Shown one piece after another: positions 26,679 through 57,995 of a stretch of DNA of 64,000 nt. The stretch covers positions 162,304 to 226,303 of the IMG/VR virus record IMGVR_UViG_3300042319_002138, one strand, 5' to 3'. A program made the position numbers and the translations under genes. Positions within the stretch are counted from its first letter, which is position 1. Each line of letters starts with the position of its first letter. Under the pieces are notes generated by a model, which worked only from the letters and a program-made list of their open reading frames with translations, was not told the DNA's origin and ran no database searches.

Positions 26679-26718
26679 CAAAAAAGAAAAAGTTCTTTGA
26701 TGTATTGGTATTAGTAAT

Positions 26719-26791
26719 GACTCAGTAGCTCAATTGGTAGAGCTCCACACTGTTAATGTGGCCGTTACAGGTTCAAGTCCTGTCTGAGTCG
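26719..26791 (+). tRNA. tRNA-Asn(GUU)
   Basis: Cloverleaf; loop CTGTTAA. Confidence 0.93.
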
Positions 26792-26794
26792 CTG

Positions 26795-26915
26795 AGGTTG
26801 ATTGGGGAATGATATAACGTTAACGTGTCAGTAGTCGTGGTTATATCGGAGTTGTAACTGTCCGAGTAAAGCCAATCGTAAAAGGGGATGTCCACACAAC
26901 CATCTTCCCCTTTCC
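26795..26915 (+). ncRNA. Candidate structured RNA between tRNA-Asn and tRNA-Tyr
   Basis: GATTGG/CCAATC, GATATAAC/GTTATATC and GGGGATG/CATCTTCC stems. Confidence 0.5.
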
Positions 26916-26921
26916 TAACTT

Positions 26922-27002
26922 GGGAACTGAAAGTCGTTTGGATACGGCAGCGAAACTGTAAATTTCGTCCTCGCGGGAGTGGTTCGAGTCCACCAGGTCC
27001 CA
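26922..27002 (+). tRNA. tRNA-Tyr(GUA), atypical D arm
   Basis: Loop CTGTAAA, T arm GGTTCGAGTCC, acceptor GGGAACT/AGGTCCC. Confidence 0.75.
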
Positions 27003-27070
27003 CAAAAAAAAATAAATGTAATATAAGTGGATTTTAACTCTGTTTGTTATATTTATAATAAAAGAATATT

Positions 27071-27520
27071 ATGAAACAGAGAGAAGTTAAAATTACTGAT
27101 GAAGAAATAAAGTTGGCATATGACAAATACGACACACTACATCAGGCATCCGCAGAATTAAAAATGACTACTGTGTCATTATGGAGAAGGGCAAAAAAAA
27201 TTGGTTTAGCCTGGAAAGATAAAAACTTTAAACCTGAACAACAAAAAATACCTTTAAACGAGATTATAGAAGGTAAACATCCGTACTACCAAACCTTAAA
27301 ATTAAAAAAAAGGTTATTGAAAGAAGGGGTTAAAGAAAATAAGTGTGATATTTGCGGTATAATAGATTGGAATAATATAGAGTTATCAATGCAATTAGAC
27401 CATATTGATGGTGACTCACACAACCACAAATTGGATAATTTAAGGATGGTTTGCCCTAACTGCCATTCACAAACAAACACTTATTGTGGTAAAAATAAAA
27501 AAATCAAAGCGGAAATTTGA
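27071..27520 (+). CDS. HNH homing endonuclease inside tRNA cluster 1
   Basis: 'KCDICG...QLDHIDGDSHNHKLDNLRMVCPNCH'. Confidence 0.9.
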   Translation: MKQREVKITDEEIKLAYDKYDTLHQASAELKMTTVSLWRRAKKIGLAWKDKNFKPEQQKIPLNEIIEGKHPYYQTLKLKKRLLKEGVKENKCDICGIIDWNNIELSMQLDHIDGDSHNHKLDNLRMVCPNCHSQTNTYCGKNKKIKAEI

Positions 27521-27550
27521 AAACAACATGTCTTCCTGTATATTTTATAC

Positions 27551-27622
27551 GCGTCTTTGGTGTAATTGGTAGCACGGCTGGTTCCAACCCAGTCGGTCAG
27601 GGTTCGAGGCCTTGGGGATGTG
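27551..27622 (+). tRNA. tRNA-Trp(CCA)
   Basis: Loop TTCCAAC; G-U-rich acceptor. Confidence 0.8.
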
Positions 27623-27627
27623 CAAAT

Positions 27628-27703
27628 GGTGATGTAGCTCAGTTGGTAGAGCAAAGGACTGAAAATCCTTGTGTCGAAGGTTCAATTCCTTCCATCACCA
27701 CCA
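27628..27703 (+). tRNA. tRNA-Phe(GAA)
   Basis: Loop CTGAAAA; encoded CCA. Confidence 0.95.
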
Positions 27704-27707
27704 TTAT

Positions 27708-27782
27708 AGGGTAATGGACTAATTGGCAAGTCACCACGTTTGGGACGTGGGCATCGTGAGAGTTCGAGTCTCTCTTACCCTA
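27708..27782 (+). tRNA. tRNA-Pro(UGG)
   Basis: Loop TTTGGGA. Confidence 0.9.
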
Positions 27783-27790
27783 CTATACAA

Positions 27791-27863
27791 TGTCCTATGG
27801 TGTAATTGGCAACACGTCGGTTTTTGGTACCGAAGAGTCGAGGTTCGAACCCTTGTGGGACAA
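27791..27863 (+). tRNA. tRNA-Gln(UUG)
   Basis: Loop TTTTGGT. Confidence 0.9.
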
Positions 27864-27869
27864 CAATAT

Positions 27870-27943
27870 GGTGTTTGAAGCATTAAGGTGATGTACTAGT
27901 TTGTGGGACTAGGAAAGACGGGTCGGTACCGTCCTTACACCCA
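27870..27943 (+). tRNA. tRNA-His(GUG), non-canonical T loop
   Basis: Loop TTGTGGG; G-1 extended acceptor; T loop GTCGGTA. Confidence 0.75.
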
Positions 27944-27947
27944 AAAA

Positions 27948-28037
27948 GGAAAGGTGGGTGAGTGGCTAAAACCAACAATCTGCTAAGTTGTCGTACCTGT
28001 AAGGGTACCGAGGGTTCGAATCCCTCCCTTTCCTCCA
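27948..28037 (+). tRNA. tRNA-Ser(GCU)
   Basis: Loop CTGCTAA, long variable arm, CCA. Confidence 0.93.
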
Positions 28038-28040
28038 TAT

Positions 28041-28112
28041 GTGGATGTGATGTAACGGTTAACATGAGACTCTTATACAGTCTTCTCGGTGGTTCAACTC
28101 CACCCATCCATA
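28041..28112 (+). tRNA. tRNA-Ile(UAU)
   Basis: Anticodon arm AGACT-CTTATAC-AGTCT. Confidence 0.8.
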
Positions 28113-28117
28113 CTATT

Positions 28118-28191
28118 ACACTCTTAGCTCAATGGATTAGAGCACAACGTTACGGACGTTGGGGTTGGTGGTTCGAGTCCATCAGAGTGTA
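28118..28191 (+). tRNA. tRNA-Arg(ACG)
   Basis: Loop TTACGGA. Confidence 0.9.
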
Positions 28192-28200
28192 CAATAATAA

Positions 28201-28271
28201 GGCACCATGCCCGAGTGGTTAGGGGTCGGTCTGCAAAACCGCTTACATTGGTTCGAACCCAATTGGTGCCT
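28201..28271 (+). tRNA. tRNA-Cys(GCA)
   Basis: Loop CTGCAAA. Confidence 0.92.
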
Positions 28272-28354
28272 CTATCTTTAATTTCTTTTATATTCAATAT
28301 AGGCCCAAACACCAACAAATATTGGGGTTAGTATAGCAATAACTATTTCTGTAT

Positions 28355-30562
28355 TCATCGCATAATTGTTAAATGTCCTGTTATCATTTTACGTGAGTCA
28401 TCATACTCAGACCCATACATTATTCTCCAAACATAAATCCCATCAAAACACATTTTATTATTATAAGTACCATCCCAACCAACGGTATGATTGTATGATT
28501 CAAAAATTGTTTCACCCCATCTATTGAATACCAATAAATTATAATCATAGACATCAAACCCATCAGTAAATATTGGTAACCAAATATTGTTGAAAGCATC
28601 ACCATCGGGGGTAAATGTATTAGGTATATAAATTAATTCTTGTGGACATTCTTGTATTGCTATATTAGCTTGTTCTTCATTAGAAACACAACCATTAACC
28701 GTTTGGGAAACGCTAATTGTATAAAAACCAACATTATTCCAAACATAAGGTAAACTATTATCTTGTATTGTATCACCTTCAACAACCCAATCAAACAACC
28801 CAGATAAAGATGAATAAGCTGTATAGATTCTAAAAATACTATCACCTTCACAAAGTTGGTTAAATTCATATGAAGGTGTTACAGATGTTATGATTGGTTG
28901 TGGGTTTACAATAACGTTGATTGTTGTATCAAATGGGCAATTACTTTGTGTATATGTATAAGTTACATCATTGTTTGTTATGATACCTTGTTGTGGGCAA
29001 AATTCATCAGTCTGAACCCCATTGACTAAGAAAGTACCATTTAAAGGTGAACCCACTAAATCTACACAACCATCATAATCACAAAAAGGACCAATAGGGT
29101 CTATTGTAGGGTTTATGTTTAAAATAAATGTAGTGAAGTAAGAGGTATCACTATTACAACCAATAGGACTAGTAGAATAAACACTTATAGAGTCTTGATA
29201 TAAACCACTAGGTTCTAATGACCAATCCGTTGTTATATTATCAGTACCTTGACCATTTATTATTTGTGGTGTTGTAGACCATATGTAGTTGTAACCAACA
29301 CCCATAGAAGGTACACTATAACTTTCTGATGTTGATAAATAACATACCGTATCAGGACCACTAATAGGTGTCATTATTATTTGTGCTGGGTTAGTGAGTG
29401 TTGCATTACCTGTTACGGTACAACCTATACCGTCTGTAATTAAAAAACTATAATTACCATAACAAAGGTTAGTGGGGTTAAAAGTTGTTTGTAGAGTATT
29501 CCAAGAAATAGTAGTGACACCATTGGTTCCGTTAGGGATTACATTAATACTACCATCACAATAGTTATAACAAGTTGGGTCAATAAAAGTAATTGTAGGT
29601 TGTGGTAAGTTAGGTGGACCAGGTTGTACAAACACCGTATCAGGTCCTGGACCGGCAATACTATTACAAGTATTCCATCCAACATTACAAGAAGGATATA
29701 CTAGTTGACAAGTATAATTAGCTCCTTGTACAGGTGGTGTAACCGTAATGGACGCACCAACCCCAATTGGATTTGGGTTACCTACAATATACCATGTTGG
29801 TACAGGTAAAACAGTTGGTCCACTTGGAGTGTATCGGTACGCATCATTATTTGCTGTCCATTGTGTGGAATTCCTACCTGGTACAGTTATCGCCACGGTT
29901 CCTGTGGTATTATGTAATCCTTGAACCGCGGTACCTCCCGCCCAAGCTAGACAGTTTGGTTTTGATTGAATATAATTTTCTATTACGTTTGTTGATTCAT
30001 AAATCACTGTATGAAATGTCCCCAGTAAATTTGTACATGAAAACATAGGGACACCAACCCAACTAACAACTAATTTTCTACAAGGTGCTGTACCTTGAAC
30101 TTGGTACCTAATTTGCCCACCTAAACCTGGGTGCCAATCTTGCCAAGGACCCATGACACAATTTTTTGGTACTGTACCCGCACCATTAGGTATTGTTGCT
30201 GAAGTAAATGTTGTTGGTTGTGCCGGTGAAAAAGAAATCCAACCGTTAGAACCAACCCAAAATTGATTGTATGTTTGTCCAAAGAAACAAAATGTAAACC
30301 CAATATTAAAAGGACCTTGTTGTGAATCATCCGACATAAATAATTGTGTACCAGTATTTGTTTGTGTTACATAAGGAATATTTGTAACACCGTAGTTTGT
30401 TGTTTGATTTGGATTTGAACCTGGTCCACATTGACTAAAATCGGCAGTTAATGTTGTTGACCCAACACCACAAGGTAGTATTTGGTCTGGTCCTAAATAA
30501 GGACAGTATTGTGAATAGGTCACAAAAGAAATTAGTATAAAAAGGTATTTAATTAAGTTCAT
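28355..30562 (-). CDS. Secreted adhesin-like protein with T9SS type B (gliding motility-associated, CHU_C) C-terminal domain
   Basis: Signal peptide ending YSQ; C-terminal 'YIPNTFTPDGDAFN...VFNRWGE...GWDGTYN...GIYVW'. Confidence 0.88.
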   Translation of the reverse strand: MNLIKYLFILISFVTYSQYCPYLGPDQILPCGVGSTTLTADFSQCGPGSNPNQTTNYGVTNIPYVTQTNTGTQLFMSDDSQQGPFNIGFTFCFFGQTYNQFWVGSNGWISFSPAQPTTFTSATIPNGAGTVPKNCVMGPWQDWHPGLGGQIRYQVQGTAPCRKLVVSWVGVPMFSCTNLLGTFHTVIYESTNVIENYIQSKPNCLAWAGGTAVQGLHNTTGTVAITVPGRNSTQWTANNDAYRYTPSGPTVLPVPTWYIVGNPNPIGVGASITVTPPVQGANYTCQLVYPSCNVGWNTCNSIAGPGPDTVFVQPGPPNLPQPTITFIDPTCYNYCDGSINVIPNGTNGVTTISWNTLQTTFNPTNLCYGNYSFLITDGIGCTVTGNATLTNPAQIIMTPISGPDTVCYLSTSESYSVPSMGVGYNYIWSTTPQIINGQGTDNITTDWSLEPSGLYQDSISVYSTSPIGCNSDTSYFTTFILNINPTIDPIGPFCDYDGCVDLVGSPLNGTFLVNGVQTDEFCPQQGIITNNDVTYTYTQSNCPFDTTINVIVNPQPIITSVTPSYEFNQLCEGDSIFRIYTAYSSLSGLFDWVVEGDTIQDNSLPYVWNNVGFYTISVSQTVNGCVSNEEQANIAIQECPQELIYIPNTFTPDGDAFNNIWLPIFTDGFDVYDYNLLVFNRWGETIFESYNHTVGWDGTYNNKMCFDGIYVWRIMYGSEYDDSRKMITGHLTIMR

Positions 30563-30705
30563 TTTTTTTTTATTTATAAATATAATATTAAGACGTATTT
30601 AAATGTAAATAGAAGGAACACTTATCCCAAAAGGTGGGATTGGAGAATATCTAGTACTTTTGGCTTATTTTTTAAATTTACGATTAAATAGAATATTTAT
30701 ATTAT

Positions 30706-31455
30706 ATGAAGTTAATTAGAGAATTCGATGATTTTAGTTGGACTAATATGGGTACACTTAATCCGTTTATGAGTGATGACCCACTTGTTGTTGTATGGTT
30801 AGATAAATCTGCCACTGAATCAGAGATTAATAAATTATATGATATGCTTTTGGAAGTTAATATAGAAATTAGTACATCAAAGTCAGATTTTGTAAAAAGT
30901 TTATTAACATATTCTAGAAATGGGTCTGCATATGTTAAATCTTACATAGCTCAAAATGGTGAAAAAAGAGCTGGGTATGGTGATACAAAAGCTTTATTTG
31001 ATGAACATAAATATTGGAAAGCTATGGAAGATTTAGACGGTAAACCATATATAGAATATAAATTAGGTGATATCTTTAAAGATAGATTAAATGAGTCTGA
31101 AGAGTTAAATTGGATTATAGAAAGTAACCCATCATTTAGAAACAAGATAATTATTTTTGAACCACTGATTATTGAGGATGAGTATAATATTGTTATAGAT
31201 GGTTTATTAGAATTTGATGAGGACCTTTATACCTATAGTGGTAATTTAGAAGAATTAAGACCTTTCACTTCTTATGATTATTTACACCATTTAGTTATAG
31301 GTTTAAATGGTGTAGTAGCTTATGGTGGGGCCAATGAACATAACAACGAAGACTGGGGTGGTTTTATGGATAACGTAGAAAATTACATAGGTAATTATTA
31401 TAAAAATTTTAACAACCCAGAAGTTATTGATGGAAGAAAATATTTTAATCTTTAA
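30706..31455 (+). CDS. Acidic two-module protein (MKLIREFDDFSW; internal RLNESEELNWI)
   Basis: ATATTTATA upstream; shared motif family. Confidence 0.6.
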   Translation: MKLIREFDDFSWTNMGTLNPFMSDDPLVVVWLDKSATESEINKLYDMLLEVNIEISTSKSDFVKSLLTYSRNGSAYVKSYIAQNGEKRAGYGDTKALFDEHKYWKAMEDLDGKPYIEYKLGDIFKDRLNESEELNWIIESNPSFRNKIIIFEPLIIEDEYNIVIDGLLEFDEDLYTYSGNLEELRPFTSYDYLHHLVIGLNGVVAYGGANEHNNEDWGGFMDNVENYIGNYYKNFNNPEVIDGRKYFNL

Positions 31456-31479
31456 TAACTCCAATTAATACTTATTGAT

Positions 31480-36541: not shown

Positions 36542-36572
36542 TTTGACAATTAATAAACTTTTACTATATTTG
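36542..36572 (+). promoter_or_regulatory. Bacteroidota-type promoter for leader 2 / tRNA cluster 2
   Basis: TTTGACA and TATATTTG; flanking sequence closely resembles the leader-1 promoter. Confidence 0.75.
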
Positions 36573-36614
36573 TACCATATTTAATTAATACGAACAAAAA
36601 TTTTTATAAATTCA

Positions 36615-36716
36615 ATGAAAACAACAATGACATACAAACAAGGGACCGTTAAAACGGTTGATGGGAAAGTGGATTCACTTTTCTACGGACATGGGTTGTC
36701 ATACTGGAGTTGTTGA
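36615..36716 (+). CDS. Leader peptide 2 (33 aa, MKTTMTYKQGTVKTVDGKVDSLFYGHGLSYWSC)
   Basis: Short ORF between promoter and terminator; codons mirror tRNA cluster 2. Confidence 0.8.
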   Translation: MKTTMTYKQGTVKTVDGKVDSLFYGHGLSYWSC

Positions 36717-36741
36717 TTTGAATTTACTCTATATATAGAAT

Positions 36742-36773
36742 AACCCTGGGTCCAAAAGATTCAGGGTTTTTTG
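36742..36773 (+). terminator. Attenuator terminator of tRNA cluster 2
   Basis: AACCCTGGGTC-caaaa-GATTCAGGGTT plus T-tract. Confidence 0.8.
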
Positions 36774-36799
36774 TTCTTTGATATATCGGTTTAAAAAAA

Positions 36800-36889
36800 G
36801 GAAGGGTGGCAGAGTTGGTCTATTGCATCTGATTTGAAATCAGAAGTACCTTTGAAAGGGTACCGTGGGTTCGAATCCTACCTCTTCCT
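36800..36889 (+). tRNA. tRNA-Ser(UGA)
   Basis: Loop TTTGAAA, long variable arm. Confidence 0.93.
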
Positions 36890-36896
36890 CATAAAT

Positions 36897-36968
36897 GGTC
36901 CATTGGTGTAGTGGCCAACATACATCCCTGTCACGGATGTGCCGCGAGTTCGATTCTCGCATGGACCG
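36897..36968 (+). tRNA. tRNA-Asp(GUC)
   Basis: Loop CTGTCAC. Confidence 0.92.
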
Positions 36969-37009
36969 CAACTAACCATAAATCCTAGTAACCCCTAGGT
37001 TGGTTAAAC

Positions 37010-37082
37010 AGTTCCTTAGCTCAGCTGGGAGAGCAACTCGCTTACATCGAGAAGGTCACAGGTTCGAACCCTGTAGGAACTA
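37010..37082 (+). tRNA. tRNA-Val(UAC)
   Basis: Loop CTTACAT. Confidence 0.92.
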
Positions 37083-37091
37083 CAATAAATT

Positions 37092-37166
37092 GCCTCATTA
37101 GCTCAGCTGGCTTAGAGCGTCTGATTTGTACTCAGAAGGCCGTGGGTTCGATTCCTACATGAGGCT
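37092..37166 (+). tRNA. tRNA-Thr(UGU)
   Basis: Loop TTTGTAC. Confidence 0.92.
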
Positions 37167-37228
37167 CAATTAATAACAAACAAATAAAAACGTCAGATTA
37201 TGGAAAGTGGCAAGTATGGCAAACACAA

Positions 37229-37300
37229 TCCCTCGTAGCAAACAAGTGTAGGCAACGGACTTTTAATCCGTGGGGCTGGGAGCGTTACCCGGCGGGGGAA
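37229..37300 (+). tRNA. tRNA-Lys(UUU), non-canonical T loop
   Basis: ACGGA-CTTTTAA-TCCGT; T arm CTGGG-AGCGTTA-CCCGG; 7-bp acceptor. Confidence 0.75.
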
Positions 37301-37308
37301 CAAAACAC

Positions 37309-37378
37309 ACCGAGGCTTAGTGGTAAAGAACTATCTCTCATAAGGATGGTCAAGTGGGTTCAATTCCCATACTCGGTA
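37309..37378 (+). tRNA. tRNA with CAU anticodon (Met or Ile2), short D arm
   Basis: Loop CTCATAA; T arm GTGGG-TTCAATT-CCCAT. Confidence 0.7.
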
Positions 37379-37386
37379 CATTATAT

Positions 37387-37457
37387 TGCGGCAAGGTGTA
37401 ATTGGTTGCATGGGAGTCTCATAAACTTCAGGGGTGGTTCGAGTCCACAGCACGCTA
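37387..37457 (+). tRNA. tRNA with CAU anticodon, imperfect acceptor stem
   Basis: GGAGT-CTCATAA-ACTTC; bulged acceptor. Confidence 0.6.
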
Positions 37458-37462
37458 CTAAT

Positions 37463-37537
37463 GGGGATATAGTTTAATTGGCTAAAACATCTGATTTGCA
37501 TTCAGAAGATGTCTCGGTTCGATTCCGAGTATCTCCA
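37463..37537 (+). tRNA. tRNA-Ala(UGC)
   Basis: Loop TTTGCAT; G3-U70. Confidence 0.92.
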
Positions 37538-37570
37538 CAATAAAATAACAAAAGAAAAAGAAAGAAATTA

Positions 37571-37690
37571 ATGAAGATAGTGTTAACAGGTAAATTAGAA
37601 TCACATAGAGAAATTTTTAGAGGAGAAAGAGAAAAAAATAAATTGATTAAAAGAATAAAAAAATTTATTTTTAAAAGAAAAAACGCTTAA
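37571..37690 (+). CDS. Small basic ORF inside tRNA cluster 2 (39 aa)
   Basis: ATG 37571 to TAA 37690; not in the ORF track. Confidence 0.35.
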   Translation: MKIVLTGKLESHREIFRGEREKNKLIKRIKKFIFKRKNA

Positions 37691-37734
37691 TAGAACAAAG
37701 TACAAGTTCAGGGTGGGGTGCGGTTCCCACAAAT

Positions 37735-37811
37735 GCGGGTGTAGCTCAATTGACTAGAGTACTAGCCTTCCAAGCTGGGAGTTGCGGGTTTGAATCCCGC
37801 CACCCGCTCCA
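37735..37811 (+). tRNA. tRNA-Gly(UCC)
   Basis: Loop CTTCCAA; CCA. Confidence 0.92.
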
Positions 37812-37812
37812 T

Positions 37813-37895
37813 ACGTCAGTGGCGGAATTGGTAGACGCGTTGGTTTTAGGAACCAATATCGTTAAGATGTGGGGGTTCGACTCCCCCCTGACGTA
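37813..37895 (+). tRNA. tRNA-Leu(UAG)
   Basis: Loop TTTAGGA, long variable arm. Confidence 0.93.
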
Positions 37896-37938
37896 CTTTT
37901 ATTTTGCCAATTAAACAATAACCCTTATATTTGTAATT

Positions 37939-43432: not shown

Positions 43433-43486
43433 GAAAAAGATTTGGTAGATTAAAAAAGATTACTTACATTTGTAAGACAAACAACG

Positions 43487-43915
43487 GGGGTAGGAAGTTA
43501 GAGATGAGTGTCCTACTCCCGTGACAAAAAGAAAAAGTTCTTTGACATATTAAAACGGGGACAAGGTAACCACAAACCCACTGGTAATAGGCAGTTCTTG
43601 AGATGGAATGCAAGACAGAACGTAACCCCTACCTTGTTCTTTTTTAAAATATATTGTGGTGGTAAGAAAAGGTGAACTCGTTAAGTTCATAGGCCTGTTG
43701 ACAAAAGATGGTGAAACGAGTGTGGTTGTCGACTACTGCATCACATATATAATACATTGTGTTGTTCCCTTGAGAAAGGAATCAAGAATAAGAGTGGACA
43801 GACTTTAAGCACTACAACACAGAGGACTCAACCTCAAAGAACCTGTACCCTTGAAAAACTCGTTTAAGTAAAGCAGGTTTGCTCCGAAATAAAAGGGTAT
43901 GAGAATAAGGAGTAT
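43487..43915 (+). ncRNA. Tandem array of candidate structured small RNAs
   Basis: Consecutive closed stems: GGGGGTAGGA/TCCTACTCCC, ACAAGGTA/TACCTTGT, TGTGGTG/CATCACA, TGTGTTGT/ACAACACA, and a pseudoknot-like AACCTG/CAGGTT with TACCCTT/AAGGGTA. Confidence 0.55.
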
Positions 43916-43917
43916 TT

Positions 43918-44000
43918 GCTCGGGTGGTGAAATAGGTATACACGTTTGACTTAAAATCAAATTCCCATTGGGAGTGAGGGTTCAAGTCCCTCTCCGAGTA
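43918..44000 (+). tRNA. tRNA-Leu(UAA)
   Basis: TTTGA-CTTAAAA-TCAAA, long variable arm. Confidence 0.92.
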
Positions 44001-44061
44001 CTGTGAAATGAACAACGTCACCACAAGAGTTGTACCTTTATGGTTTTATAATGTGGTATTT

Positions 44062-44133
44062 GGTCCTATCGACTATCGGTTAGGTCGTCAGGTTTTCATC
44101 CTGGAAAGCGGGGTTCGATTCCCCGTAGGACTA
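44062..44133 (+). tRNA. tRNA-Glu(UUC)
   Basis: Loop TTTTCAT. Confidence 0.92.
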
Positions 44134-44216
44134 CAAAAGAGGTGGATACTTTGTACGTAGATAATTTAGTAATATCTTGTCGTAGTGCACCGTTGACGAA
44201 ACCTCTTTTATTTTTG

Positions 44217-44289
44217 GGTCCCGTAGTGTAATGGATTAACATAAGGAGCTTCTACCTCTTTGATTCAGGTTCGAATCCTGACGGGACTA
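44217..44289 (+). tRNA. tRNA-Arg(UCU)
   Basis: Loop CTTCTAC. Confidence 0.9.
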
Positions 44290-44356
44290 CTAAAAAAATA
44301 TTAACTACTAGGTTCGATTTTTAATAAACCTTAAATATTTATTAATAAAATATATT

Positions 44357-44962
44357 ATGAATTTTGAGGAAAAATATAATAAAGAAGAACTTGAGAAGTT
44401 AATTTTTGTTGAGAGTAAGAGTTATCGTGAAATTGGTAAAATTTATGGTGTTAGTGACGCATACATAAAAAAAGTGTGTGGCAGATTAGGGATTAAACTT
44501 AGAAAAAGAAAAAATTTTCCTGAAAATTTTATACCACACAATAAAGGTATGGGTAAAAAAGTTATATGTAAAAATTGTGGTAAAGAAACAAAAAGTTCAC
44601 ACGATAAACAAATATATTGTTCATTTGATTGTAATGTGGAACATAAAAATAAAAATAAATACAAAGATTACTTAGACAATCAAGAAAAATATTGTAATAC
44701 CACATCAGGTTTGCGATGGTTAAAAAAATATTTTTTAATAGACCAAGATAATAAGTGTAATATTTGTGGAATAGATAATTTTTGGAACGGTAAACCATTA
44801 GTTTTTGTTATGGACCATATAAACGGTGATGCTAGTAATAACAAAAGAGATAATCTAAGATTAATATGTCATAATTGTGATTCACAGTTAGACACATACA
44901 AATCTAAAAATAAGAATTCAGCAAGGAAAGAAAGATATTTGTTAAACTACAAAAATATTTAA
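44357..44962 (+). CDS. HNH homing endonuclease inside tRNA cluster 3
   Basis: 'KCNICG...VMDHINGDASNNKRDNLRLICHNCD'; N-terminal CxxC module. Confidence 0.9.
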   Translation: MNFEEKYNKEELEKLIFVESKSYREIGKIYGVSDAYIKKVCGRLGIKLRKRKNFPENFIPHNKGMGKKVICKNCGKETKSSHDKQIYCSFDCNVEHKNKNKYKDYLDNQEKYCNTTSGLRWLKKYFLIDQDNKCNICGIDNFWNGKPLVFVMDHINGDASNNKRDNLRLICHNCDSQLDTYKSKNKNSARKERYLLNYKNI

Positions 44963-45177
44963 AATAAACGAGAAAGAGATACTCGTAGGGTTTTTAAGTA
45001 TCCCTCAAAACTTAACGGAGCTGGTACCACCACGTCAAGGGGTACTCGTTGGGAATCGGAAGGAAGACTCTCCTATCCCCCAAGTAAGAGTTGACTTTTA
45101 AGTGGTAAGACACGTTGGGTTTTGAAATAGAAAAACTGTGAATATCTACTCACCATTAATCTCAGGTGGGGAAACAT

Positions 45178-45283
45178 AGTCAGGTGGCGGAATTGGTTAG
45201 ACGCTAAATTAACGAGTGGATAGTGTGCCATTGGGGAAGGGCCAAGAAAGTTACACATACAGGTTCAAGTCCTGTCCTGACTA
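45178..45283 (+). ncRNA. tRNA-like RNA (Leu-type D arm, T arm, acceptor AGTCAGG/CCTGACT) lacking a canonical anticodon arm
   Basis: TGGCGGAATTGGTTAGACGC ... ACAGGTTCAAGTCCTGT; the middle does not form a 5-bp stem with 7-nt loop. Confidence 0.7.
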
Positions 45284-45300
45284 CAAAAAAATAAAAAATT

Positions 45301-45549
45301 ATGGAAAATAAAGAAACATACCAAATGGTGAATTATGATGGTGATAGTTACGACAGTAAGATCCCTGTGGAATTAGTTGAGTCGTTCCTTAAAATGAAAG
45401 AACTAATGGAACAGGTGTCTAATGGGAAATATTATTGTACACCAAGTATGTATTATACAGATGAATTGGAAGGTGTTTCAGTAGGTATAGTTGAGGTTAA
45501 TGGTGACGGGACACATATTAAAACACCATTTAGTTTAATTATCAAATAA
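45301..45549 (+). CDS. Hypothetical protein
   Basis: ORF between the two tRNA-like RNAs. Confidence 0.55.
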   Translation: MENKETYQMVNYDGDSYDSKIPVELVESFLKMKELMEQVSNGKYYCTPSMYYTDELEGVSVGIVEVNGDGTHIKTPFSLIIK

Positions 45550-45554
45550 AAAAT

Positions 45555-45635
45555 AGTCAGGTGGCGAAATGGTGACGCCTAAATGAGACCCGTGGGGCGA
45601 AAAGACTCTCGTAGGTTCAAATCCTGTCCTGACTA
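45555..45635 (+). ncRNA. Second tRNA-like RNA with identical acceptor AGTCAGG/CCTGACT and no anticodon arm
   Basis: TGGCGAAATGGTGACGC ... GTAGGTTCAAATCCTGT. Confidence 0.7.
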
Positions 45636-45640
45636 ATTTA

Positions 45641-45714
45641 GGTCCTTTAGCTCAGTCGGTTAGAGCAACAGACTCATAATCTGTGGGTCCACGGTTCGAG
45701 CCCGTGAAGGACCA
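45641..45714 (+). tRNA. tRNA(CAU), probably Ile2 (lysidine type)
   Basis: ACAGA-CTCATAA-TCTGT; body resembles bacterial Ile2. Confidence 0.8.
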
Positions 45715-45797
45715 CAATCCCTTTGTATTGACAAGGGGATTTTTATTTTGATATTTAAAAATAATTCCTTATCTTTGTAGAAATAAAATAAGGGACT

Positions 45798-49249: not shown

Positions 49250-49267
49250 TTTTATTATATTTGCCTT

Positions 49268-49742: not shown

Positions 49743-49804
49743 TTAAAAAAAAAATTGACAGATTAAAAAAAAGTTATTATCTTTGTTAAACAAATAAAAA
49801 ACAT

Positions 49805-49913
49805 ACACAAGTGGTGAAATTGGTAAACACGGGGTGTAACAACTCTGACCGAAAATAATCTACCTTCGGGTCGATAAAAGTAGGTTTTGGAGGTTCGAAT
49901 CCTTCTTTGTGTA
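49805..49913 (+). ncRNA. tRNA-like RNA with aberrant anticodon arm and expanded variable region
   Basis: Acceptor ACACAAG/TTTGTGT, D arm TGGTGAAATTGGTAAACAC, T arm GGAGGTTCGAATCCTTC. Confidence 0.65.
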
Positions 49914-50002
49914 CACTAATCACATAGTATCACTATCATTATCTAGTGAGTAAATAGTAGAGTAAATCTACAGCTATGTGATAAAGTTCTTTGAAATAAT
50001 AC

Positions 50003-50292
50003 ATATAAGTGGCGGAATTGGTAGACGCTTACGTTTGAAAAGAGAGTAAGGTTAGATTGGGAGTTCTGTAAAAGCCTAAAAGACCTTAGATTTAGCTAAT
50101 CTTGGTGGTCTATAATCAGACTGGTCAAGAGGTTTGGTTACGGTACTCTTTAAAAACCAACTGTAACAAGTTATATAGATAGATTTAATAATATGATAGA
50201 ATTAAATCCTTAGACTCTTGTAAAATGTATGGACTGAAAGAAACCTAGTTTTGAATAAGTTCGTGGAGGTTCGAATCCTCCCTTATATACCA
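50003..50292 (+). ncRNA. 290-nt RNA with tRNA ends (acceptor, D arm, T arm, CCA) and an insert of about 235 nt
   Basis: ATATAAG-TGGCGGAATTGGTAGACGC ... GGAGGTTCGAATCCTCC-CTTATAT-ACCA. Confidence 0.75.
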
Positions 50293-50297
50293 TATAT

Positions 50298-50370
50298 TGT
50301 GGGATGGAGAAGTTGGTATCTCAGCAGGCTCATAACCTGAAGGCCGCTGGTTCGAGTCCAGCTCCCGCTA
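50298..50370 (+). tRNA. tRNA-Met(CAU), initiator-like
   Basis: Loop CTCATAA; mismatched 1:72 pair. Confidence 0.85.
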
Positions 50371-50376
50371 CTAATA

Positions 50377-50419
50377 GTACCTATCACGCTACCCATAAGA
50401 ACAGCGTCCCAGGATAGGT
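50377..50419 (+). ncRNA. Small structured RNA after tRNA-Met
   Basis: ACCTATC/GATAGGT enclosing ACGCT/AGCGT. Confidence 0.45.
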
Positions 50420-50563
50420 CTTTTAACCCCACCGTTGGAAACAACGGGACCCTCTAGTTCTCAGGTTCTAGAGTTTTACGCCCCACACCGATTTCGAATA
50501 AGTGTGGGGTTTTTTATTGACAAAATTTAAATCTGTATTATATTTATAATAAAAAAATAAAAT

Positions 50564-53092: not shown

Positions 53093-53176
53093 AAAAATTA
53101 AAATAATCAAACCTTTTTTAAAAAAAATATTAACAAAATATTGATTATTTAAAAATTTAACATATCTTTGTATTAA

Positions 53177-53299
53177 AGTGAGTGGTGGAGAGCATACACG
53201 GTCCCATGACGGTGGGATTGGTTTCCCTAAATAAGGTTGTCGGATGAAAAACCGAAACACGAAAAGATTCATCGGAGGGTTTAATTCCCTCCCTCACTG
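53177..53299 (+). ncRNA. tRNA-like RNA with multi-hairpin insert
   Basis: AGTGAG/CTCACT acceptor, D-like TGGTGGAGAGCATACAC, T-like GAGGG-TTTAATT-CCCTC; own TATCTTTG promoter and terminator. Confidence 0.55.
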
Positions 53300-53308
53300 T
53301 TCAAAAAC

Positions 53309-53337
53309 AAAAAAGGGACCTTCGGGTCCCCTTTTTT
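53309..53337. terminator. Bidirectional terminator
   Basis: AAAAGGGACC-ttcg-GGTCCCCTTTT. Confidence 0.85.
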
Positions 53338-55231: not shown

Positions 55232-55291
55232 TCTTATATAAATATTTTGCCAAACAAAAAAGTATGCTTATATTTGTATAAATAATAAGTT

Positions 55292-55750
55292 ATGGTAAAG
55301 AATTTTATATATTTCATCGTTTTTGTTTTTACTTTTGTCCTTACTTCATGTAAGAAAGAACCTAATAACCACAAAATAAAGTATGAGATTGAGTTTATTG
55401 AGGGTTGTCAATCAGGTAGTTCAAATGCTATTGATGTAAACTGTACACCACATTATAATGATGTACCATCAGATTTACCTTATATTAATAAAACTCAAAT
55501 ACAACATGGGTTTATATGGAAGTATGAGTATTGGCAATTGCATGATGGTGACAAAGTATTTTTCAATGTTATGCCACAACAAGGATATCATTTTATTATG
55601 AGAGTTTATGTAGATGGTACATTGGTCTCGTATCGAGAAATATTAACAAGTTATGGTTCTTATTATGTTACCACTACTTTAGATATTTGGGGTATCAATA
55701 ACAAAGCTGATGTTGATAGTGGTGTTATAGAATTTATTTATTCAGAATAA
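55292..55750 (+). CDS. Putative lipoprotein
   Basis: Lipobox 'VLTSC' followed by KKE. Confidence 0.65.
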   Translation: MVKNFIYFIVFVFTFVLTSCKKEPNNHKIKYEIEFIEGCQSGSSNAIDVNCTPHYNDVPSDLPYINKTQIQHGFIWKYEYWQLHDGDKVFFNVMPQQGYHFIMRVYVDGTLVSYREILTSYGSYYVTTTLDIWGINNKADVDSGVIEFIYSE

Positions 55751-55840
55751 CTTTTACTGTTTTAGTATATATTTAATAATGTTGACAACGTAATTTCGCC
55801 CCTCGTTAGTTTATTTAGATGGTAAGAGGTTGTTGGTGAC

Positions 55841-55873
55841 AAAAAAGGGGACTTAATGTCCCCCTTTTTTTTT
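55841..55873. terminator. Bidirectional terminator
   Basis: AAAAAAGGGGAC-ttaat-GTCCCC-T-tract. Confidence 0.8.
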
Positions 55874-55875
55874 TA

Positions 55876-57300
55876 TTAAATTTTTGTTGATTTTTCTTTT
55901 ATAGTTTCTAAAACAGAAGTAGGTATATCTGATGTAGATTTACCAATGTAATCATCAAGGAAACCAGATTCAGTTTTAATACCATACATTGAAGTATCAG
56001 GTTGTACTTGTTTTCTTAGTTTCATCATGTTGATTGTTCTATATGATTCTGGGTCTAATGGGTCAACTTTAACTATCTTCTCAACTAAGTCTTCTGGATT
56101 AGATAAGAATACATAGAAAGAAGTTTGACCGTGTTTTGCTCTTTCTTCAGCACTCATAGACCATTTTCTAAACAATACTTTACTATCTGTATTGTTTATT
56201 TGTTTTGCGTCAACTACTTTAGATAATTCATATTTTTGGTCATCTGTCAATTCCTTATTCAAGTCATTCATAACATCAATATTATTAAGAATAGATGGAT
56301 TGAATTTAACTAAAGTCATTTTTTGTAACTCTGTTAAATGTTCTTGCATTTGTTTATAATCATTAGCGTTAACTGTACCTTTGACGTAGTTAGTGATAAA
56401 GTCCATTTTTTGTTTATCATTAAGGTCAGACGCTAAAATACTAAAAGCTTTAGAGTTAAGTCCACCTTTTTTAATAATTTTACTAATCACGTTAGTTTTT
56501 TGTTCAGGTGTAATATAATCTTTAAATTTAGCGTACTCATCAAATTTAGGGTCATCAAGGAAAGAAGCTATTTTTATAGCTAATTTTTTCTTAGTGTGTG
56601 AAGGATTAAAAGCTTCCACAACCGCCATCATATCAGGAGTCACCCAATAAGGTGCGTTACTGTGTGAATCATCTCGTGCATCCCACCAAGTTAAATCTCT
56701 ACCATTACCATCAAATCTCCATTGTAAAGCGTATTTGTAATGTGTACTATCACTATTAACTAAATTATTGTTAATAAAAAAGTAGAAATTTGAGTGTTCA
56801 CTATAGGAGTCAAAATAAGTATTTAAATTATTATCACCACTTTTACCAGCTATACACCACTTAGACCCAGCACCATATTTACATGAAGCTTCAACTGTGA
56901 ATGGTACGTAAATCACAACACCATCTTTGTCATAAATTTTTGTCGCTTCTTTAGAAATTCTTTTGTCTTTTTCATCTTTTAAAGCTTGAGCAACAACATC
57001 ATTTAATTCAGATAAAGATTTATAAGTATTAATATCTTTTTGTTTAATTCTAGGTAATAGTCTATGATAGTCCACTACAGCTTTAGCTATTTGGTCAGCC
57101 ATTGGTATACTGTCATCTTGATTTTTACCTAAAGCGGTTTTAATCATCCAGTCAAGATATTTGTTATTTCCTGATGGGTCAACCTCAACAAACATATCAA
57201 CAAGTTCGGTATGGTCTTCACCATATTTTTTAATTACATCTTCTCTTCTACCTTCTAATAATATAGTAGATTCTAAAATTTGAGATAAGTTAAATTTCAT
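55876..57300 (-). CDS. 'YGAGSKWC' family protein (PcfJ-like) with helical repeats
   Basis: 'DPSGNNKYLDW', 'ASCKYGAGSKWCI'. Confidence 0.6.
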   Translation of the reverse strand: MKFNLSQILESTILLEGRREDVIKKYGEDHTELVDMFVEVDPSGNNKYLDWMIKTALGKNQDDSIPMADQIAKAVVDYHRLLPRIKQKDINTYKSLSELNDVVAQALKDEKDKRISKEATKIYDKDGVVIYVPFTVEASCKYGAGSKWCIAGKSGDNNLNTYFDSYSEHSNFYFFINNNLVNSDSTHYKYALQWRFDGNGRDLTWWDARDDSHSNAPYWVTPDMMAVVEAFNPSHTKKKLAIKIASFLDDPKFDEYAKFKDYITPEQKTNVISKIIKKGGLNSKAFSILASDLNDKQKMDFITNYVKGTVNANDYKQMQEHLTELQKMTLVKFNPSILNNIDVMNDLNKELTDDQKYELSKVVDAKQINNTDSKVLFRKWSMSAEERAKHGQTSFYVFLSNPEDLVEKIVKVDPLDPESYRTINMMKLRKQVQPDTSMYGIKTESGFLDDYIGKSTSDIPTSVLETIKEKSTKI

Positions 57301-57301
57301 T

Positions 57302-57712
57302 TTATTTCTTTTTTTTATAAATATCACCTTTCCGCTTAAATTTCCTTAAAACTTTATGTGATTCTTCAGTTATTTTATATCCTTTCCTTATGTTATCCTC
57401 TGAAGGTATAAATCTTAGGTTAGAAATACCCCCTATTTTTTCGGGTGGGATGTTATTATTGTAACCGTAAATTATTGGTACCGTGTGGTCCAAATGATAA
57501 CAGGAAGGTCCCCTAAAACACCGTTTGTCATAGTTTATTAATTTAAAAAGTGGTTGTGATTCAGTTATAACCCATACTTTTATATAATAAAGTCTTTTTT
57601 CTAAATCTTTTATAGCATTTAATTTACGTTTTTTGAGGTGTGGGTTTTTTCTAACCAAGACTCTACATTCCTGAATTAACTCAAGGTCCTTTTTACTTTT
57701 AGGTATAGCCAT
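57302..57712 (-). CDS. HNH-like nuclease
   Basis: 'YHLDHTVPI...ISNLRFIPSEDNIRKG'. Confidence 0.6.
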   Translation of the reverse strand: MAIPKSKKDLELIQECRVLVRKNPHLKKRKLNAIKDLEKRLYYIKVWVITESQPLFKLINYDKRCFRGPSCYHLDHTVPIIYGYNNNIPPEKIGGISNLRFIPSEDNIRKGYKITEESHKVLRKFKRKGDIYKKKK

Positions 57713-57749
57713 TTACTTATTTTAATGTATACATATAATTATATAAAAA

Positions 57750-57944
57750 TTGTATATTATGAATAATGAACAAAAGGCAAAAATTTACGACCAAATACTT
57801 AGAGAACATGATGAAATGGCTAGACAAGTATCGGCTATAAAAAATAAATTTGATTTAACTAGAGAAGATGAAAAACAAATGGAATCTTTAAAAAAAGAAA
57901 TGGATTTATTACAAAGAAAAGCAATGTCTTTAGGTAGTCTTTAA
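57750..57944 (+). CDS. Small coiled-coil protein
   Basis: ORF. Confidence 0.5.
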   Translation: MYIMNNEQKAKIYDQILREHDEMARQVSAIKNKFDLTREDEKQMESLKKEMDLLQRKAMSLGSL

Positions 57945-57995
57945 TTTGATTATTTAATATTTATTCTTATATTTGTAAGAGTTCTTTGAATTATT

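What the first reader, a model, noticed from the sequence alone, without database searches (positions are those of the whole stretch)
26691..57989. boxA-like GTTCTTTGA motif placed only in stable-RNA leaders
GTTCTTTGA occurs at 26692, 36773, 43537, 49986 and 57981, each just upstream of tRNAs, tRNA-like RNAs or tmRNA; two copies share the longer AAAAAGAAAAAGTTCTTTGA. It resembles rRNA-operon boxA (TGCTCTTTAACA in E. coli; NusB/NusE antitermination). Inference: the phage recruits the host rRNA antitermination complex for its RNA operons, downstream of the attenuation decision.
Basis: partly seen in the sequence, partly recalled or inferred. Interest (0 to 1): 0.62.

Follow-up and report, generated by a model that had tools for sequence, protein, structure and literature searches.

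The report
Host rRNA boxA signal in phage tRNA operons
A large lake-water phage puts the same short RNA signal that its host phylum uses at the front of ribosomal RNA operons (boxA, the loading site for the anti-termination factors NusB and S10) at the head of each of its five tRNA and tmRNA operons, and many other phages of the same host phylum do the same.

Summary
GTTCTTTGA sits at all five stated positions, sense to the RNA genes and non-coding. Two more lie inside ORFs elsewhere in the 226-kb genome.

The boxA reading is strongly supported by comparison, though not by biochemistry. In 120 Bacteroidota rRNA loci, GTTC[T/A]TTGA-NN-TATTG occurs sense-strand at the two classical boxA positions: 90-133 nt before 16S, and in the spacer after tRNA-Ala, about 60 nt before 23S. 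A matrix built from 131 such sites ranks the five phage sites as the top five hits of the whole genome. Three score like real rrn sites.

The contexts also mimic rrn operons: promoter, hairpin, purine tract, boxA; or tRNA, short linker, boxA. In IMG/VR, 58 of 236 boxA 16-mers lie within 400 nt of a tRNA or tmRNA gene, 57 on the same strand. A reversed-pattern control gives 0 of 116. The non-rrn tRNA operons checked in one Flavobacterium genome lack it.

The part of the phage held encodes no NusB, NusG, S10 or RNA polymerase beta subunit, and it uses host-type promoters.

Most likely the element loads host NusB-S10 to make transcription of long untranslated RNA operons termination-resistant. 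This is a new variant of a known mechanism, and I found no report of it.

The parts
26365..26394 (+). Operon 1 promoter: TTGACA, 16 nt, then TATCTTTG (Bacteroidota-type -33/-7 boxes).
   Evidence: It is paralogous to the operon 2 promoter region.
26560..26592 (+). Terminator-like hairpin plus T-run. It follows a ~37-codon leader ORF and precedes tRNA-Ile.
   Evidence: 11 pairs, T-run; sequence.
26692..26707 (+). boxA copy 1, GTTCTTTGATGTATTG. It lies 12 nt after tRNA-Ile(GAT) and 11 nt before tRNA-Asn, and is preceded by AAAAAGAAAAA.
   Evidence: Matrix score 22.4 bits against an rrn median of 22.2. The layout matches the host spacer: tRNA, short linker, boxA.
26605..28272 (+). tRNA array 1: 11 tRNA genes, with an HNH-like ORF embedded at 27071-27520.
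36543..36572 (+). Operon 2 promoter: TTGACA, 16 nt, then TATATTTG.
36742..36772 (+). Terminator-like hairpin plus T-run. It abuts boxA copy 2 and follows a short leader ORF.
   Evidence: The same juxtaposition occurs in viral contigs L275, L277, L296, L302, L336 and L349.
36773..36788 (+). boxA copy 2, GTTCTTTGATATATCG, 11 nt before tRNA-Ser.
   Evidence: Matrix score 12.2 bits, the weakest of the five.
36800..37896 (+). tRNA array 2: 8 tRNA genes plus one weak tRNA-like match.
43465..43472 (+). Operon 3 promoter -7 box, TACATTTG.
   Evidence: Lake-strain variants read TATCTTTG, which keeps the TAnnTTTG consensus (places 43467 and 43468).
43484..43522 (+). Stable hairpin between promoter and boxA, the boxB-like position.
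   Evidence: Fold. Host rrn leaders have promoter, hairpin, purine tract, boxA. Relatives replace this hairpin with 12 nt but keep boxA.
43537..43552 (+). boxA copy 3, GTTCTTTGACATATTA, preceded by AAAAAGAAAAA.
   Evidence: Best matrix hit of the genome, 24.2 bits. 25 of 26 nt (96%) match the Flavobacterium azizsancarii 16S-23S spacer (L231). An RNA-library contig covers 43478-43647.
43550..43647 (+). Structured RNA closed by a long stem and a T-run (terminator-like), immediately after boxA copy 3. No Rfam family.
   Evidence: The RNA-library contig ends at 43647.
43834..43842 (-). Sixth exact copy, antisense. It reads UCAAAGAAC in the operon 3 transcript and could pair with copy 3.
   Evidence: Paired with boxA in the minimum-energy fold of 43478-43917. 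Low matrix score of 9.3. Significance unknown.
43918..45715 (+). Operon 3 RNA genes: tRNA-Leu, Glu and Arg; an HNH-like ORF at 44357-44962; two tRNA-like genes; tRNA-Met. The terminator is at 45716-45741.
49755..49785 (+). Operon 4 promoter: TTGACA, 17 nt, then TATCTTTG.
49986..50001 (+). boxA copy 4, GTTCTTTGAAATAATA. It lies between a tRNA-like gene (49805-49913) and a tRNA-like gene with a ~200-nt insertion (about 50001-50294), ahead of tRNA-Met at 50298-50371.
   Evidence: Matrix score 15.6 bits.
57968..57975 (+). Operon 5 promoter -7 box, TATATTTG, 5 nt before boxA.
57981..57996 (+). boxA copy 5, GTTCTTTGAATTATTG. Its last base is the first base of the tmRNA.
   Evidence: Matrix score 21.5 bits. 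The same promoter, boxA, tmRNA layout occurs in viral contig L576.
57996..58388 (+). tmRNA gene, with its terminator at 58394-58415.
   Evidence: (99.3 bits).

Best explanation
GTTCTTTGA is the core of a 16-nt RNA element, GTTCTTTGA-NN-TATTG, of the same type as the boxA in the leaders and 16S-23S spacers of Bacteroidota rRNA operons.

The phage is a lake-water virus with a 226-kb record, about 70% complete. It transcribes its stable-RNA operons from host-type promoters with host RNA polymerase. One boxA sits near the 5' end of each of the five operons.

Inferred mechanism: when the nascent RNA exposes boxA, host NusB-S10 binds it and nucleates the rRNA-type anti-termination complex with NusG, NusA and accessory factors on the polymerase. 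The modified polymerase then resists Rho, and probably some intrinsic termination and pausing, across 0.4-2.3 kb of untranslated RNA. Distal tRNAs and the tmRNA are therefore made fully and fast. The complex may also chaperone folding.

Shown here: the sequence identity, the placement, the strand bias, the specificity and the recurrence in other phages. Inferred: Nus binding and the effect on termination.
For: **Presence and enrichment**
- Five sense copies are present; 0 of 100 shuffles reach the observed total of six.

**Match to host rRNA operons**
- In 120 Bacteroidota 16S loci the motif or its A-variant lies sense-strand about 400-450 nt before the CF319 site, and again 1450-1990 nt after it. 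It is almost never antisense.
- Rfam mapping puts it 90-133 nt before 16S, and in the spacer 9-167 nt after tRNA-Ala and 56-67 nt before 23S.
- In five complete genomes, 17 of 20 matches to the 16-mer are rrn spacers.
- A matrix from 131 rrn sites gives the five phage sites as the top five of 226 kb on both strands: 24.2, 22.4, 21.5, 15.6 and 12.2 bits, against an rrn median of 22.2. The other exact 9-mers score 9.4 or less.
- Operon 3 copies the rrn leader layout: promoter, hairpin, purine tract, boxA. Copy 1 copies the spacer layout: tRNA, short linker, boxA.

**Recurrence in other phages**
- In IMG/VR, 27 of 119 T-variant and 32 of 117 A-variant 16-mers lie within 400 nt of tRNA or tmRNA genes. 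One A-variant row was a strand-coordinate slip in my script and is left out, giving 58 of 236, 57 on the same strand. The reversed control gives 0 of 116.
- 54 of 119 hits lie outside ORFs, against 6 of 116 for the control.

**Not inherited from host tRNA operons**
- 28 non-rrn tRNA loci of a Flavobacterium genome lack the element. Four of five host tmRNA leaders lack it.
- There is no flanking homology to host rrn DNA.

**Dependence on host factors**
- The phage record has no NusB, NusG, S10 or RNA polymerase beta subunit, but it has a sigma factor and host-type promoters.

**Transcription**
- An RNA-library contig spans 43478-43647, including boxA copy 3.

**Literature**
- The B. subtilis rrn boxA-like sequence AUGAUCUUUGAAA binds NusB, and the rrn complex blocks Rho and interferes with intrinsic termination (PMC13753749).
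Against: - There is no biochemical or genetic evidence. Even the host element is called boxA only by position and sequence; I found no Bacteroidota study.
- Copies 2 and 4 match the downstream extension poorly (12.2 and 15.6 bits). Scores of 12 or more arise 0-8 times in shuffled genomes, so their support comes from the exact core plus placement.
- In operons 1 and 2, boxA lies after a terminator-like hairpin and cannot act on it.
- boxA is only 6-18 nt from the next RNA gene, so RNase P cleavage would quickly sever it from the nascent chain.
- tRNA-rich RNA is structured and may be a poor Rho substrate anyway.
- Predicted local folds pair part of boxA with the upstream purine tract; the 9-mer has a mean unpaired probability of 0.18-0.50.
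- The host is unknown. Most Flavobacteriaceae use the A-variant, while this phage uses T in all five copies.
- The RNA-library contig may be DNA carry-over.
Confidence: 0.66

Rival explanations
1. The element does bind the Nus machinery or another rRNA-maturation factor, but its main role is co-transcriptional folding or processing of the phage RNAs rather than anti-termination. It would act as an RNA chaperone or a processing signal near RNase P sites.
For: boxA sits 6-22 nt before the 5' end of the next tRNA or tmRNA in the phage and in many viral contigs. The rrn complex is known to aid rRNA folding and maturation (PMC10250234 and PMC6614801 abstracts). Several downstream genes are unusual, with tRNA-like genes carrying long insertions.
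Against: In hosts the same element lies 90-133 nt before 16S and about 60 nt before 23S, which is not at a processing site. No conserved complementary partner exists: only 2 antisense 9-mers in 120 loci. The rival is not exclusive of anti-termination.
Confidence: 0.14
2. The boxA-bearing leader RNAs act as decoys. Abundant short phage transcripts soak up host NusB-S10 and starve the host rRNA operons, contributing to host shut-off.
For: Operon 3 begins with a roughly 170-nt unit: predicted transcription start, hairpin, boxA, structured domain, T-run. One RNA-library contig matches it end to end at 43478-43647. boxA is displayed between two stable structures. RNase P cleavage would release short boxA leaders from the other operons.
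Against: There is one boxA per operon, always at the head of RNA genes, which is what a cis-acting signal needs and a decoy does not. There are no abundance data. The contig could be DNA carry-over or an assembly fragment. No precedent is known to me.
Confidence: 0.07
3. The motifs are passive relics, carried in with tRNA genes captured from host rRNA spacers, and have no function in the phage.
For: Copy 1 follows tRNA-Ile(GAT), a spacer-type tRNA. Copy 3 matches a Flavobacterium spacer in 25 of 26 nt.
Against: No homology extends beyond the 26-27-nt module, and the tRNA-Ile is only about 83% identical over 46 nt. The five copies sit in five different contexts, including a tmRNA leader. 57 other viral loci show the same strand-specific arrangement. 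Relatives keep boxA while replacing the neighbouring hairpin.
Confidence: 0.06
4. It is a DNA-level element, either part of a promoter (the TTTG resembles the Bacteroidota -33 box) or an operator for a regulator.
For: The motif contains TTTG and lies near promoters. In operon 5 it starts 5 nt after the -7 box.
Against: No TAnnTTTG box follows at promoter spacing. In hosts it lies downstream of the rrn promoters and again inside the spacer, always on the sense strand. In operons 1 and 4 it follows a transcribed tRNA gene.
Confidence: 0.03
5. Chance clustering of an AT-rich 9-mer.
For: The genome is 69% A+T. One-mismatch variants are common, 105 in the genome. Matrix scores of 12 or more occur in shuffles.
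Against: 0 of 100 shuffles reach the observed count. The top five matrix hits all fall in roughly 3-4% of the genome and on one strand. The reversed control pattern gives 0 of 116 near tRNA genes.
Confidence: 0.01

Closest known systems
rrn boxA of bacterial rRNA operons: the NusB-S10 loading site of the rRNA anti-termination complex. E. coli UGCUCUUUAACA; B. subtilis AUGAUCUUUGAAA.
   Same: - The core sequence: 9 of 12 positions match E. coli, and it is one base from the B. subtilis element that binds NusB.
- It is identical to the element at the leader and spacer positions of Bacteroidota rrn operons, including the downstream TATTG.
- It is sense-strand, lies downstream of a host-type promoter, and is often preceded by a small hairpin and a purine tract.
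   Different: It heads phage tRNA, tRNA-like and tmRNA operons rather than rRNA genes. It lies only 6-18 nt from the next RNA gene. In two operons it sits directly after a terminator-like hairpin. No binding or function has been tested.
boxA upstream of CRISPR arrays and suhB in Gammaproteobacteria: Nus-dependent protection of long untranslated arrays from Rho.
   Same: It is the same logic. A boxA in the leader of a long, repetitive, untranslated RNA array keeps polymerase going to the distal units. PMC13753749 cites boxA upstream of CRISPR operons, and PMC7862264 uses boxA to express long arrays.
   Different: Those elements are cellular and proteobacterial. Here the element is viral, in Bacteroidota-type form, and serves tRNA and tmRNA genes.
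Lambda nut sites (boxA plus boxB with phage N protein)
   Same: A phage places a host-type boxA in its own transcripts so that host NusB-S10 modifies the polymerase (PMC2800207 abstract).
   Different: Lambda needs its own N protein bound to boxB, acts on protein-coding operons, and its boxA deviates from the rrn consensus. Here the element matches the host rrn form, no N-like factor is known, and the targets are stable RNAs.

Membership tests
rrn-type boxA (NusB-S10 site of the rRNA anti-termination complex) | Sequence matches the boxA consensus of the host lineage's rRNA operons. | tested here: met
   The five sites are the top five genome-wide hits to a matrix of 131 Bacteroidota rrn leader and spacer sites. 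Three score at the rrn median. The core is one base from the B. subtilis NusB-binding boxA.
rrn-type boxA (NusB-S10 site of the rRNA anti-termination complex) | Lies on the transcribed strand, downstream of a promoter and upstream of long untranslated stable-RNA genes. | tested here: met
   All five lie on the sense strand, 5 to about 300 nt after TAnnTTTG promoters, at the head of tRNA or tmRNA operons. They are not in rRNA operons, because the phage has none.
rrn-type boxA (NusB-S10 site of the rRNA anti-termination complex) | Accessible as single-stranded RNA. | tested here: inconclusive
   The predicted mean unpaired probability of the 9-mer is 0.18-0.50. Weak pairing with the upstream purine tract is predicted. 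This is an in silico result only.
rrn-type boxA (NusB-S10 site of the rRNA anti-termination complex) | Binds the NusB-S10 heterodimer. | not testable with these tools
   It needs a gel-shift, NMR or ITC assay with host proteins. The phage itself encodes no NusB, S10 or NusG in the held 226 kb.
rrn-type boxA (NusB-S10 site of the rRNA anti-termination complex) | Confers read-through of Rho-dependent (and some intrinsic) terminators. | not testable with these tools
   No transcript-end data are available. Only one RNA-library contig lies over copy 3.
Lambda-type nut site | boxA paired with a boxB hairpin bound by a phage N-like protein. | tested here: inconclusive
   A hairpin precedes boxA in operons 2 and 3, in the rrn order (hairpin then boxA), not the lambda order. 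I did not search for an N-like protein; such proteins are small and hard to recognise.
Bacteroidota sigma-A promoter element (-33 TTTG / -7 TAnnTTTG) | A -7 box follows the TTTG at about 19-21 nt. | tested here: not met
   No TAnnTTTG follows any copy at that spacing. The true -7 boxes lie upstream of the motif.
rRNA leader-trailer processing helix | A conserved complementary partner flanks the mature RNA. | tested here: not met
   There are only 2 antisense 9-mers in 120 host rrn loci. In the phage, only operon 3 has a complement, at 43834.

The most novel reading that the evidence does not exclude
Phages of Bacteroidota build their tRNA and tmRNA operons as pseudo-rRNA operons. The short boxA-bearing leader RNAs, such as the roughly 170-nt unit at 43478-43647 or the leaders released by RNase P, additionally act in trans as decoys. 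They would drain NusB-S10 from host rRNA operons, coupling phage RNA production to shut-off of host ribosome synthesis.
Probability: 0.08. Interest if true: 0.8.

Novelty: new variant of a known kind. Interest (0 to 1): 0.66.

Why it matters
boxA-mediated anti-termination is textbook for E. coli rRNA operons and for lambda. More recently it has been described for CRISPR arrays. It has hardly been studied in Bacteroidota, and I found no report of it in phage tRNA or tmRNA operons.

If it holds, four things follow:
- It explains how phages get full-length expression of kilobase-long untranslated tRNA arrays.
- It defines the Bacteroidota boxA, GTTC[T/A]TTGA-NN-TATTG, and gives a compact natural test bed: five small operons, one element each.
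- It gives annotators a simple marker for stable-RNA operons, including unrecognised non-coding RNAs, in viral metagenomes.
- It may give a weak host-lineage signal, through the T versus A variant.

The recurrence in 58 of 236 sampled IMG/VR sites suggests a general strategy rather than an oddity of one phage.

Tried and rejected
**Searches that were uninformative**
- An IMG/VR scan with AAAAAGTTCTTTGA was too unspecific. Only 4 of 117 loci were next to tRNA or tmRNA genes, though those four looked like real boxA sites.
- Literature searches for the motif itself returned only primer lists.
- Searches for boxA in phage tRNA operons, crAss-like phages or Bacteroidetes found nothing relevant.

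**RNA families and homology**
- Rfam at a permissive E-value gave no family for the unknown RNAs at 43550-43917, 44960-45180, 50001-50294 and 50372-50520.
- blastn of the phage RNA operons against 148 host loci found no captured rrn segment.

**Host inference**
- Inferring the host from the boxA variant is not reliable. Flavobacterium spacers use the A-variant, yet Flavobacterium phage immuto carries GTTCTTTGA after its tRNA-Cys.
- Host tmRNA leaders: one of five (Flagellimonas) has GTTCTTTGA about 70 nt upstream. I did not pursue it.

**Reads**
- Laying reads gave contigs only, so no transcript ends or expression levels can be claimed. Depth peaks over tRNA genes are cross-mapping.

**Readings rejected**
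- A promoter reading, a processing-helix reading and chance were considered and rejected. See the rival explanations and the membership tests.

Full report
**What the window is.** The window is the last 64 kb of a 226,303-bp IMG/VR virus record. The record is linear and about 70% complete by CheckV. It is 31% G+C and recurs in many lake-water metagenomes. The window holds 24 tRNA genes, several tRNA-like genes and a tmRNA gene, all on the + strand and grouped in five blocks. Promoters of the Bacteroidota type (TAnnTTTG, often with TTGACA 16-17 nt upstream) precede genes throughout, including every RNA block. The held record shows no RNA polymerase beta subunit, NusB, NusG or S10. It has one sigma-70 family gene. 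The RNA operons are therefore most simply read as transcribed by host core polymerase.

**The observation.** GTTCTTTGA occurs on the + strand at 26692, 36773, 43537, 49986 and 57981, as stated. A sixth copy lies on the minus strand at 43834. That makes 6 matches against 1.06 expected, and no shuffle out of 100 reaches 6. In the whole genome there are only two further copies, both inside long ORFs. All five + strand copies in the window are non-coding and sense to the RNA genes. Copies 1 and 3 share AAAAAGAAAAAGTTCTTTGA. One-mismatch variants are scattered through coding DNA with no pattern.

- GTTCTTTGA, or GTTCATTGA in most Flavobacteriaceae, lies on the sense strand at two fixed places: about 400-450 nt before the probe site, and about 1450-1990 nt after it. 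It is almost never antisense.
- Rfam mapping on example loci places the first 90-133 nt before the 16S 5' end. The second lies in the spacer, 9-167 nt after tRNA-Ala and 56-67 nt before 23S. These are the classical positions of leader and spacer boxA.
- The conservation extends downstream. The spacer reads AAAGTTC[A/T]TTGACATATTG. The leader reads AAGTTC[T/A]TTGA followed by an A-rich stretch, commonly AAATATTGAAA.
- The phage copies share this extension: GAtgTATTG, GAtaTATCG, GAcaTATTa, GAaaTAATA and GAatTATTG.
- In five complete genomes, 17 of 20 matches to the 16-mer lie in rrn spacers.
- The core differs by one base from the B. subtilis rrn boxA-like sequence AUGAUCUUUGAAA, which was shown by NMR to bind NusB. 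Some Bacteroidales use that exact GATCTTTGA core. Nine of 12 positions match E. coli UGCUCUUUAACA.

**Specificity in the phage.** A 20-column matrix built from 131 host rrn sites was run over both strands of the 226-kb genome.
- The five sites are the five best hits: 24.2, 22.4, 21.5, 15.6 and 12.2 bits. The rrn median is 22.2.
- The coding copies and the antisense copy score 9.4 or less.
- Scores above 21 appeared once in 20 shuffled genomes, whereas scores of 12 or more are common in shuffles. Copies 2 and 4 therefore rest on the exact core plus their placement.

**Anatomy of the five operons**.

| Operon | Layout |
|---|---|
| 1 | promoter (26365-26394), ~37-codon leader ORF, terminator-like hairpin (26560-26592), tRNA-Ile, 12 nt, boxA, 11 nt, ten tRNAs |
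| 2 | paralogous promoter (36543-36572), short ORF, terminator-like hairpin (36742-36772) abutting boxA, 11 nt, eight tRNAs |
| 3 | promoter (43465), stable hairpin (43484-43522), purine tract, boxA, structured RNA ending in a T-run (43550-43647), further unknown RNAs, tRNAs |
| 4 | promoter (49755-49785), tRNA-like gene, boxA, tRNA-like gene with a long insertion, tRNA-Met |
| 5 | promoter (57968), 5 nt, boxA, tmRNA |

- Host rrn leaders show promoter, small hairpin, purine tract and boxA. The 50 nt upstream of boxA fold better than shuffles, -8.7 against -5.5 kcal/mol. Operon 3 therefore copies a host rrn leader.
- Copy 1 copies the spacer layout of tRNA, short linker and boxA.
- B. subtilis rrn operons likewise have a small hairpin immediately before boxA.

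**Not inherited from host tRNA operons or captured DNA.**
- 28 tRNA loci, covering about 20 non-rrn operons of a complete Flavobacterium genome, have no matrix hit of 10 or more.
- Four of five host tmRNA leaders lack the motif.
- blastn of the phage RNA operons against 148 host loci matches only tRNA bodies and the 26-27-nt boxA modules.

**Generality.**
- In IMG/VR the T-variant 16-mer gave 119 sampled sites. Of these, 27 lie within 400 nt of a tRNA gene, 26 on the same strand.
- The A-variant gave 117 sites. My script listed 32 near tRNA or tmRNA genes, but one (L584) was a coordinate slip, leaving 31, all on the same strand.
- Together this is 58 of 236, with 57 on the same strand. The same pattern read backwards gave 0 of 116.
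- 54 of 119 T-variant sites lie outside ORFs, against 6 of 116 controls.
- The recurring layouts are those of this phage: hairpin plus T-run plus boxA plus 8-22 nt plus tRNA; promoter plus boxA plus tRNA; tRNA plus A-rich linker plus boxA; and promoter plus boxA plus tmRNA in L576.
- An isolate, Flavobacterium phage immuto, has tRNA-Cys, 12 nt, then GTTCTTTGA.

**Population and RNA data**. These are contigs only.
- Abundant lake relatives share the promoter-to-boxA module of operon 3. One form replaces the hairpin 43482-43530 with 12 nt and resumes 6 nt before boxA.
- Another relative has AGAAGTTCATTGAAATTAAA at the same place.
- Variants at 43467 and 43468 change TACATTTG to TATCTTTG, which keeps the promoter consensus.
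- One 172-nt contig from a metatranscriptome library lies at 43478-43647, from the predicted start to the T-run and across boxA. This is compatible with a short leader transcript, but DNA carry-over cannot be excluded.

**Mechanism.** From what is established for E. coli, and partly for B. subtilis, boxA RNA loads NusB-S10. Together with NusG, NusA, SuhB and S4, this forms a complex that blocks Rho and interferes with intrinsic termination (PMC13753749; PMC6614801 abstract).
- The most likely reading is that the phage borrows this system for its long untranslated RNA operons. boxA does the same for CRISPR arrays in Gammaproteobacteria.
- The placement after a terminator-like hairpin in operons 1 and 2 means boxA cannot act on that hairpin. 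Polymerases that pass it would be made processive for the array. This step is inferred.
- Open problems are the very short distance to the next RNase P site, the weak extension in copies 2 and 4, and the unknown host.

**Rivals.** I considered a folding or processing role, a decoy role, a passive relic, a DNA-level element and chance. The first is not exclusive of the main reading. The others are disfavoured by the strand bias, the one-per-operon placement, the lack of flanking homology and the controls.

**Novelty.** The mechanism class is known. I found no paper on its use at the head of phage tRNA and tmRNA operons, or on its spread among phages of Bacteroidota. The library is incomplete, so this is absence in what could be searched. 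I rate it a new variant of a known kind.

Noticed in passing
window 26365-26592 and 36543-36772: Two paralogous leader modules stand ahead of tRNA arrays 1 and 2. Each has a near-identical promoter region (TTGACAAT..AAACTTTTA.TAT.TTTGTA.CATATTTAATTAATA), an ORF of about 35 codons, and a terminator-like hairpin with the shared loop TCCAAAAGA. With no room for another promoter before array 2, the arrays seem to depend on read-through of these hairpins.
   Followed up: partly
window 45178-45283, 45555-45635, 49805-49913 and about 50001-50294: These are tRNA-like genes with oversized insertions. The first three score 34-35 bits with Rfam tRNA but are 81-109 nt long. The last has clear acceptor, D and T arms and an encoded CCA, but about 200 nt inserted; neither ARAGORN nor Rfam calls it. 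They may be intron-bearing tRNAs or a new tRNA-like RNA class.
   Followed up: partly
window 43550-43917, 44960-45180, 50372-50520, 58480-58625: Non-coding stretches inside or after the RNA operons have strong predicted structure and terminator-like ends, but match no Rfam family even at permissive E-values for the first three. The last was covered only by the gathering-threshold scan of the window.
   Followed up: partly
window 43834-43842 (minus strand): This is an exact reverse complement of the boxA core, about 290 nt downstream of copy 3 in the same transcript. The minimum-energy fold of 43478-43917 pairs the two. It could be an anti-boxA or a leader-trailer-like helix, or it could be chance.
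   Followed up: partly
window 27071-27520 and 44357-44962: ORFs embedded in tRNA arrays 1 and 3 give weak HNH endonuclease matches (E about 1e-3 to 4e-4, below Pfam cut-offs). They are probably homing endonucleases, as is common in phage tRNA clusters.
   Followed up: partly
G000:C1:160647-160856, just upstream of the window: The phage encodes a sigma-70 family protein: Sigma70_r2 at 61 bits in an open frame of 280 aa. No RNA polymerase beta subunit was detected in the held 226 kb.
   Followed up: no
L251 (Flavobacterium sp. JP2137), L240 (Chryseobacterium sp. E1), L256 (Sphingobacterium detergens): Three perfect boxA 16-mers in host genomes lie outside rRNA operons, with no RNA gene within 1.5 kb. 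They are possible additional boxA-regulated host targets. L240 carries GTTCTTTGATGTATTG, identical to phage copy 1.
   Followed up: no
L258 (Flagellimonas sp. S174), about 70 nt upstream of its tmRNA gene: GTTCTTTGA is present upstream of one of the five host tmRNA genes examined. The other four have a promoter directly before the tmRNA and no boxA.
   Followed up: no
L118-L237 (host rRNA loci): The boxA core varies by lineage. GTTCATTGA is found in most Flavobacteriaceae. GTTCTTTGA is found in Sphingobacteriales, many Bacteroidales, Crocinitomicaceae and Fluviicola, and Chryseobacterium leaders. GATCTTTGA is found in some Bacteroidales and Paludibacter. Several loci come from genomes labelled Nostoc, Microcoleus, Eubacteriales, Christensenella or Sulfurimonas; these are evidently mis-binned Bacteroidota rRNA contigs.
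   Followed up: partly
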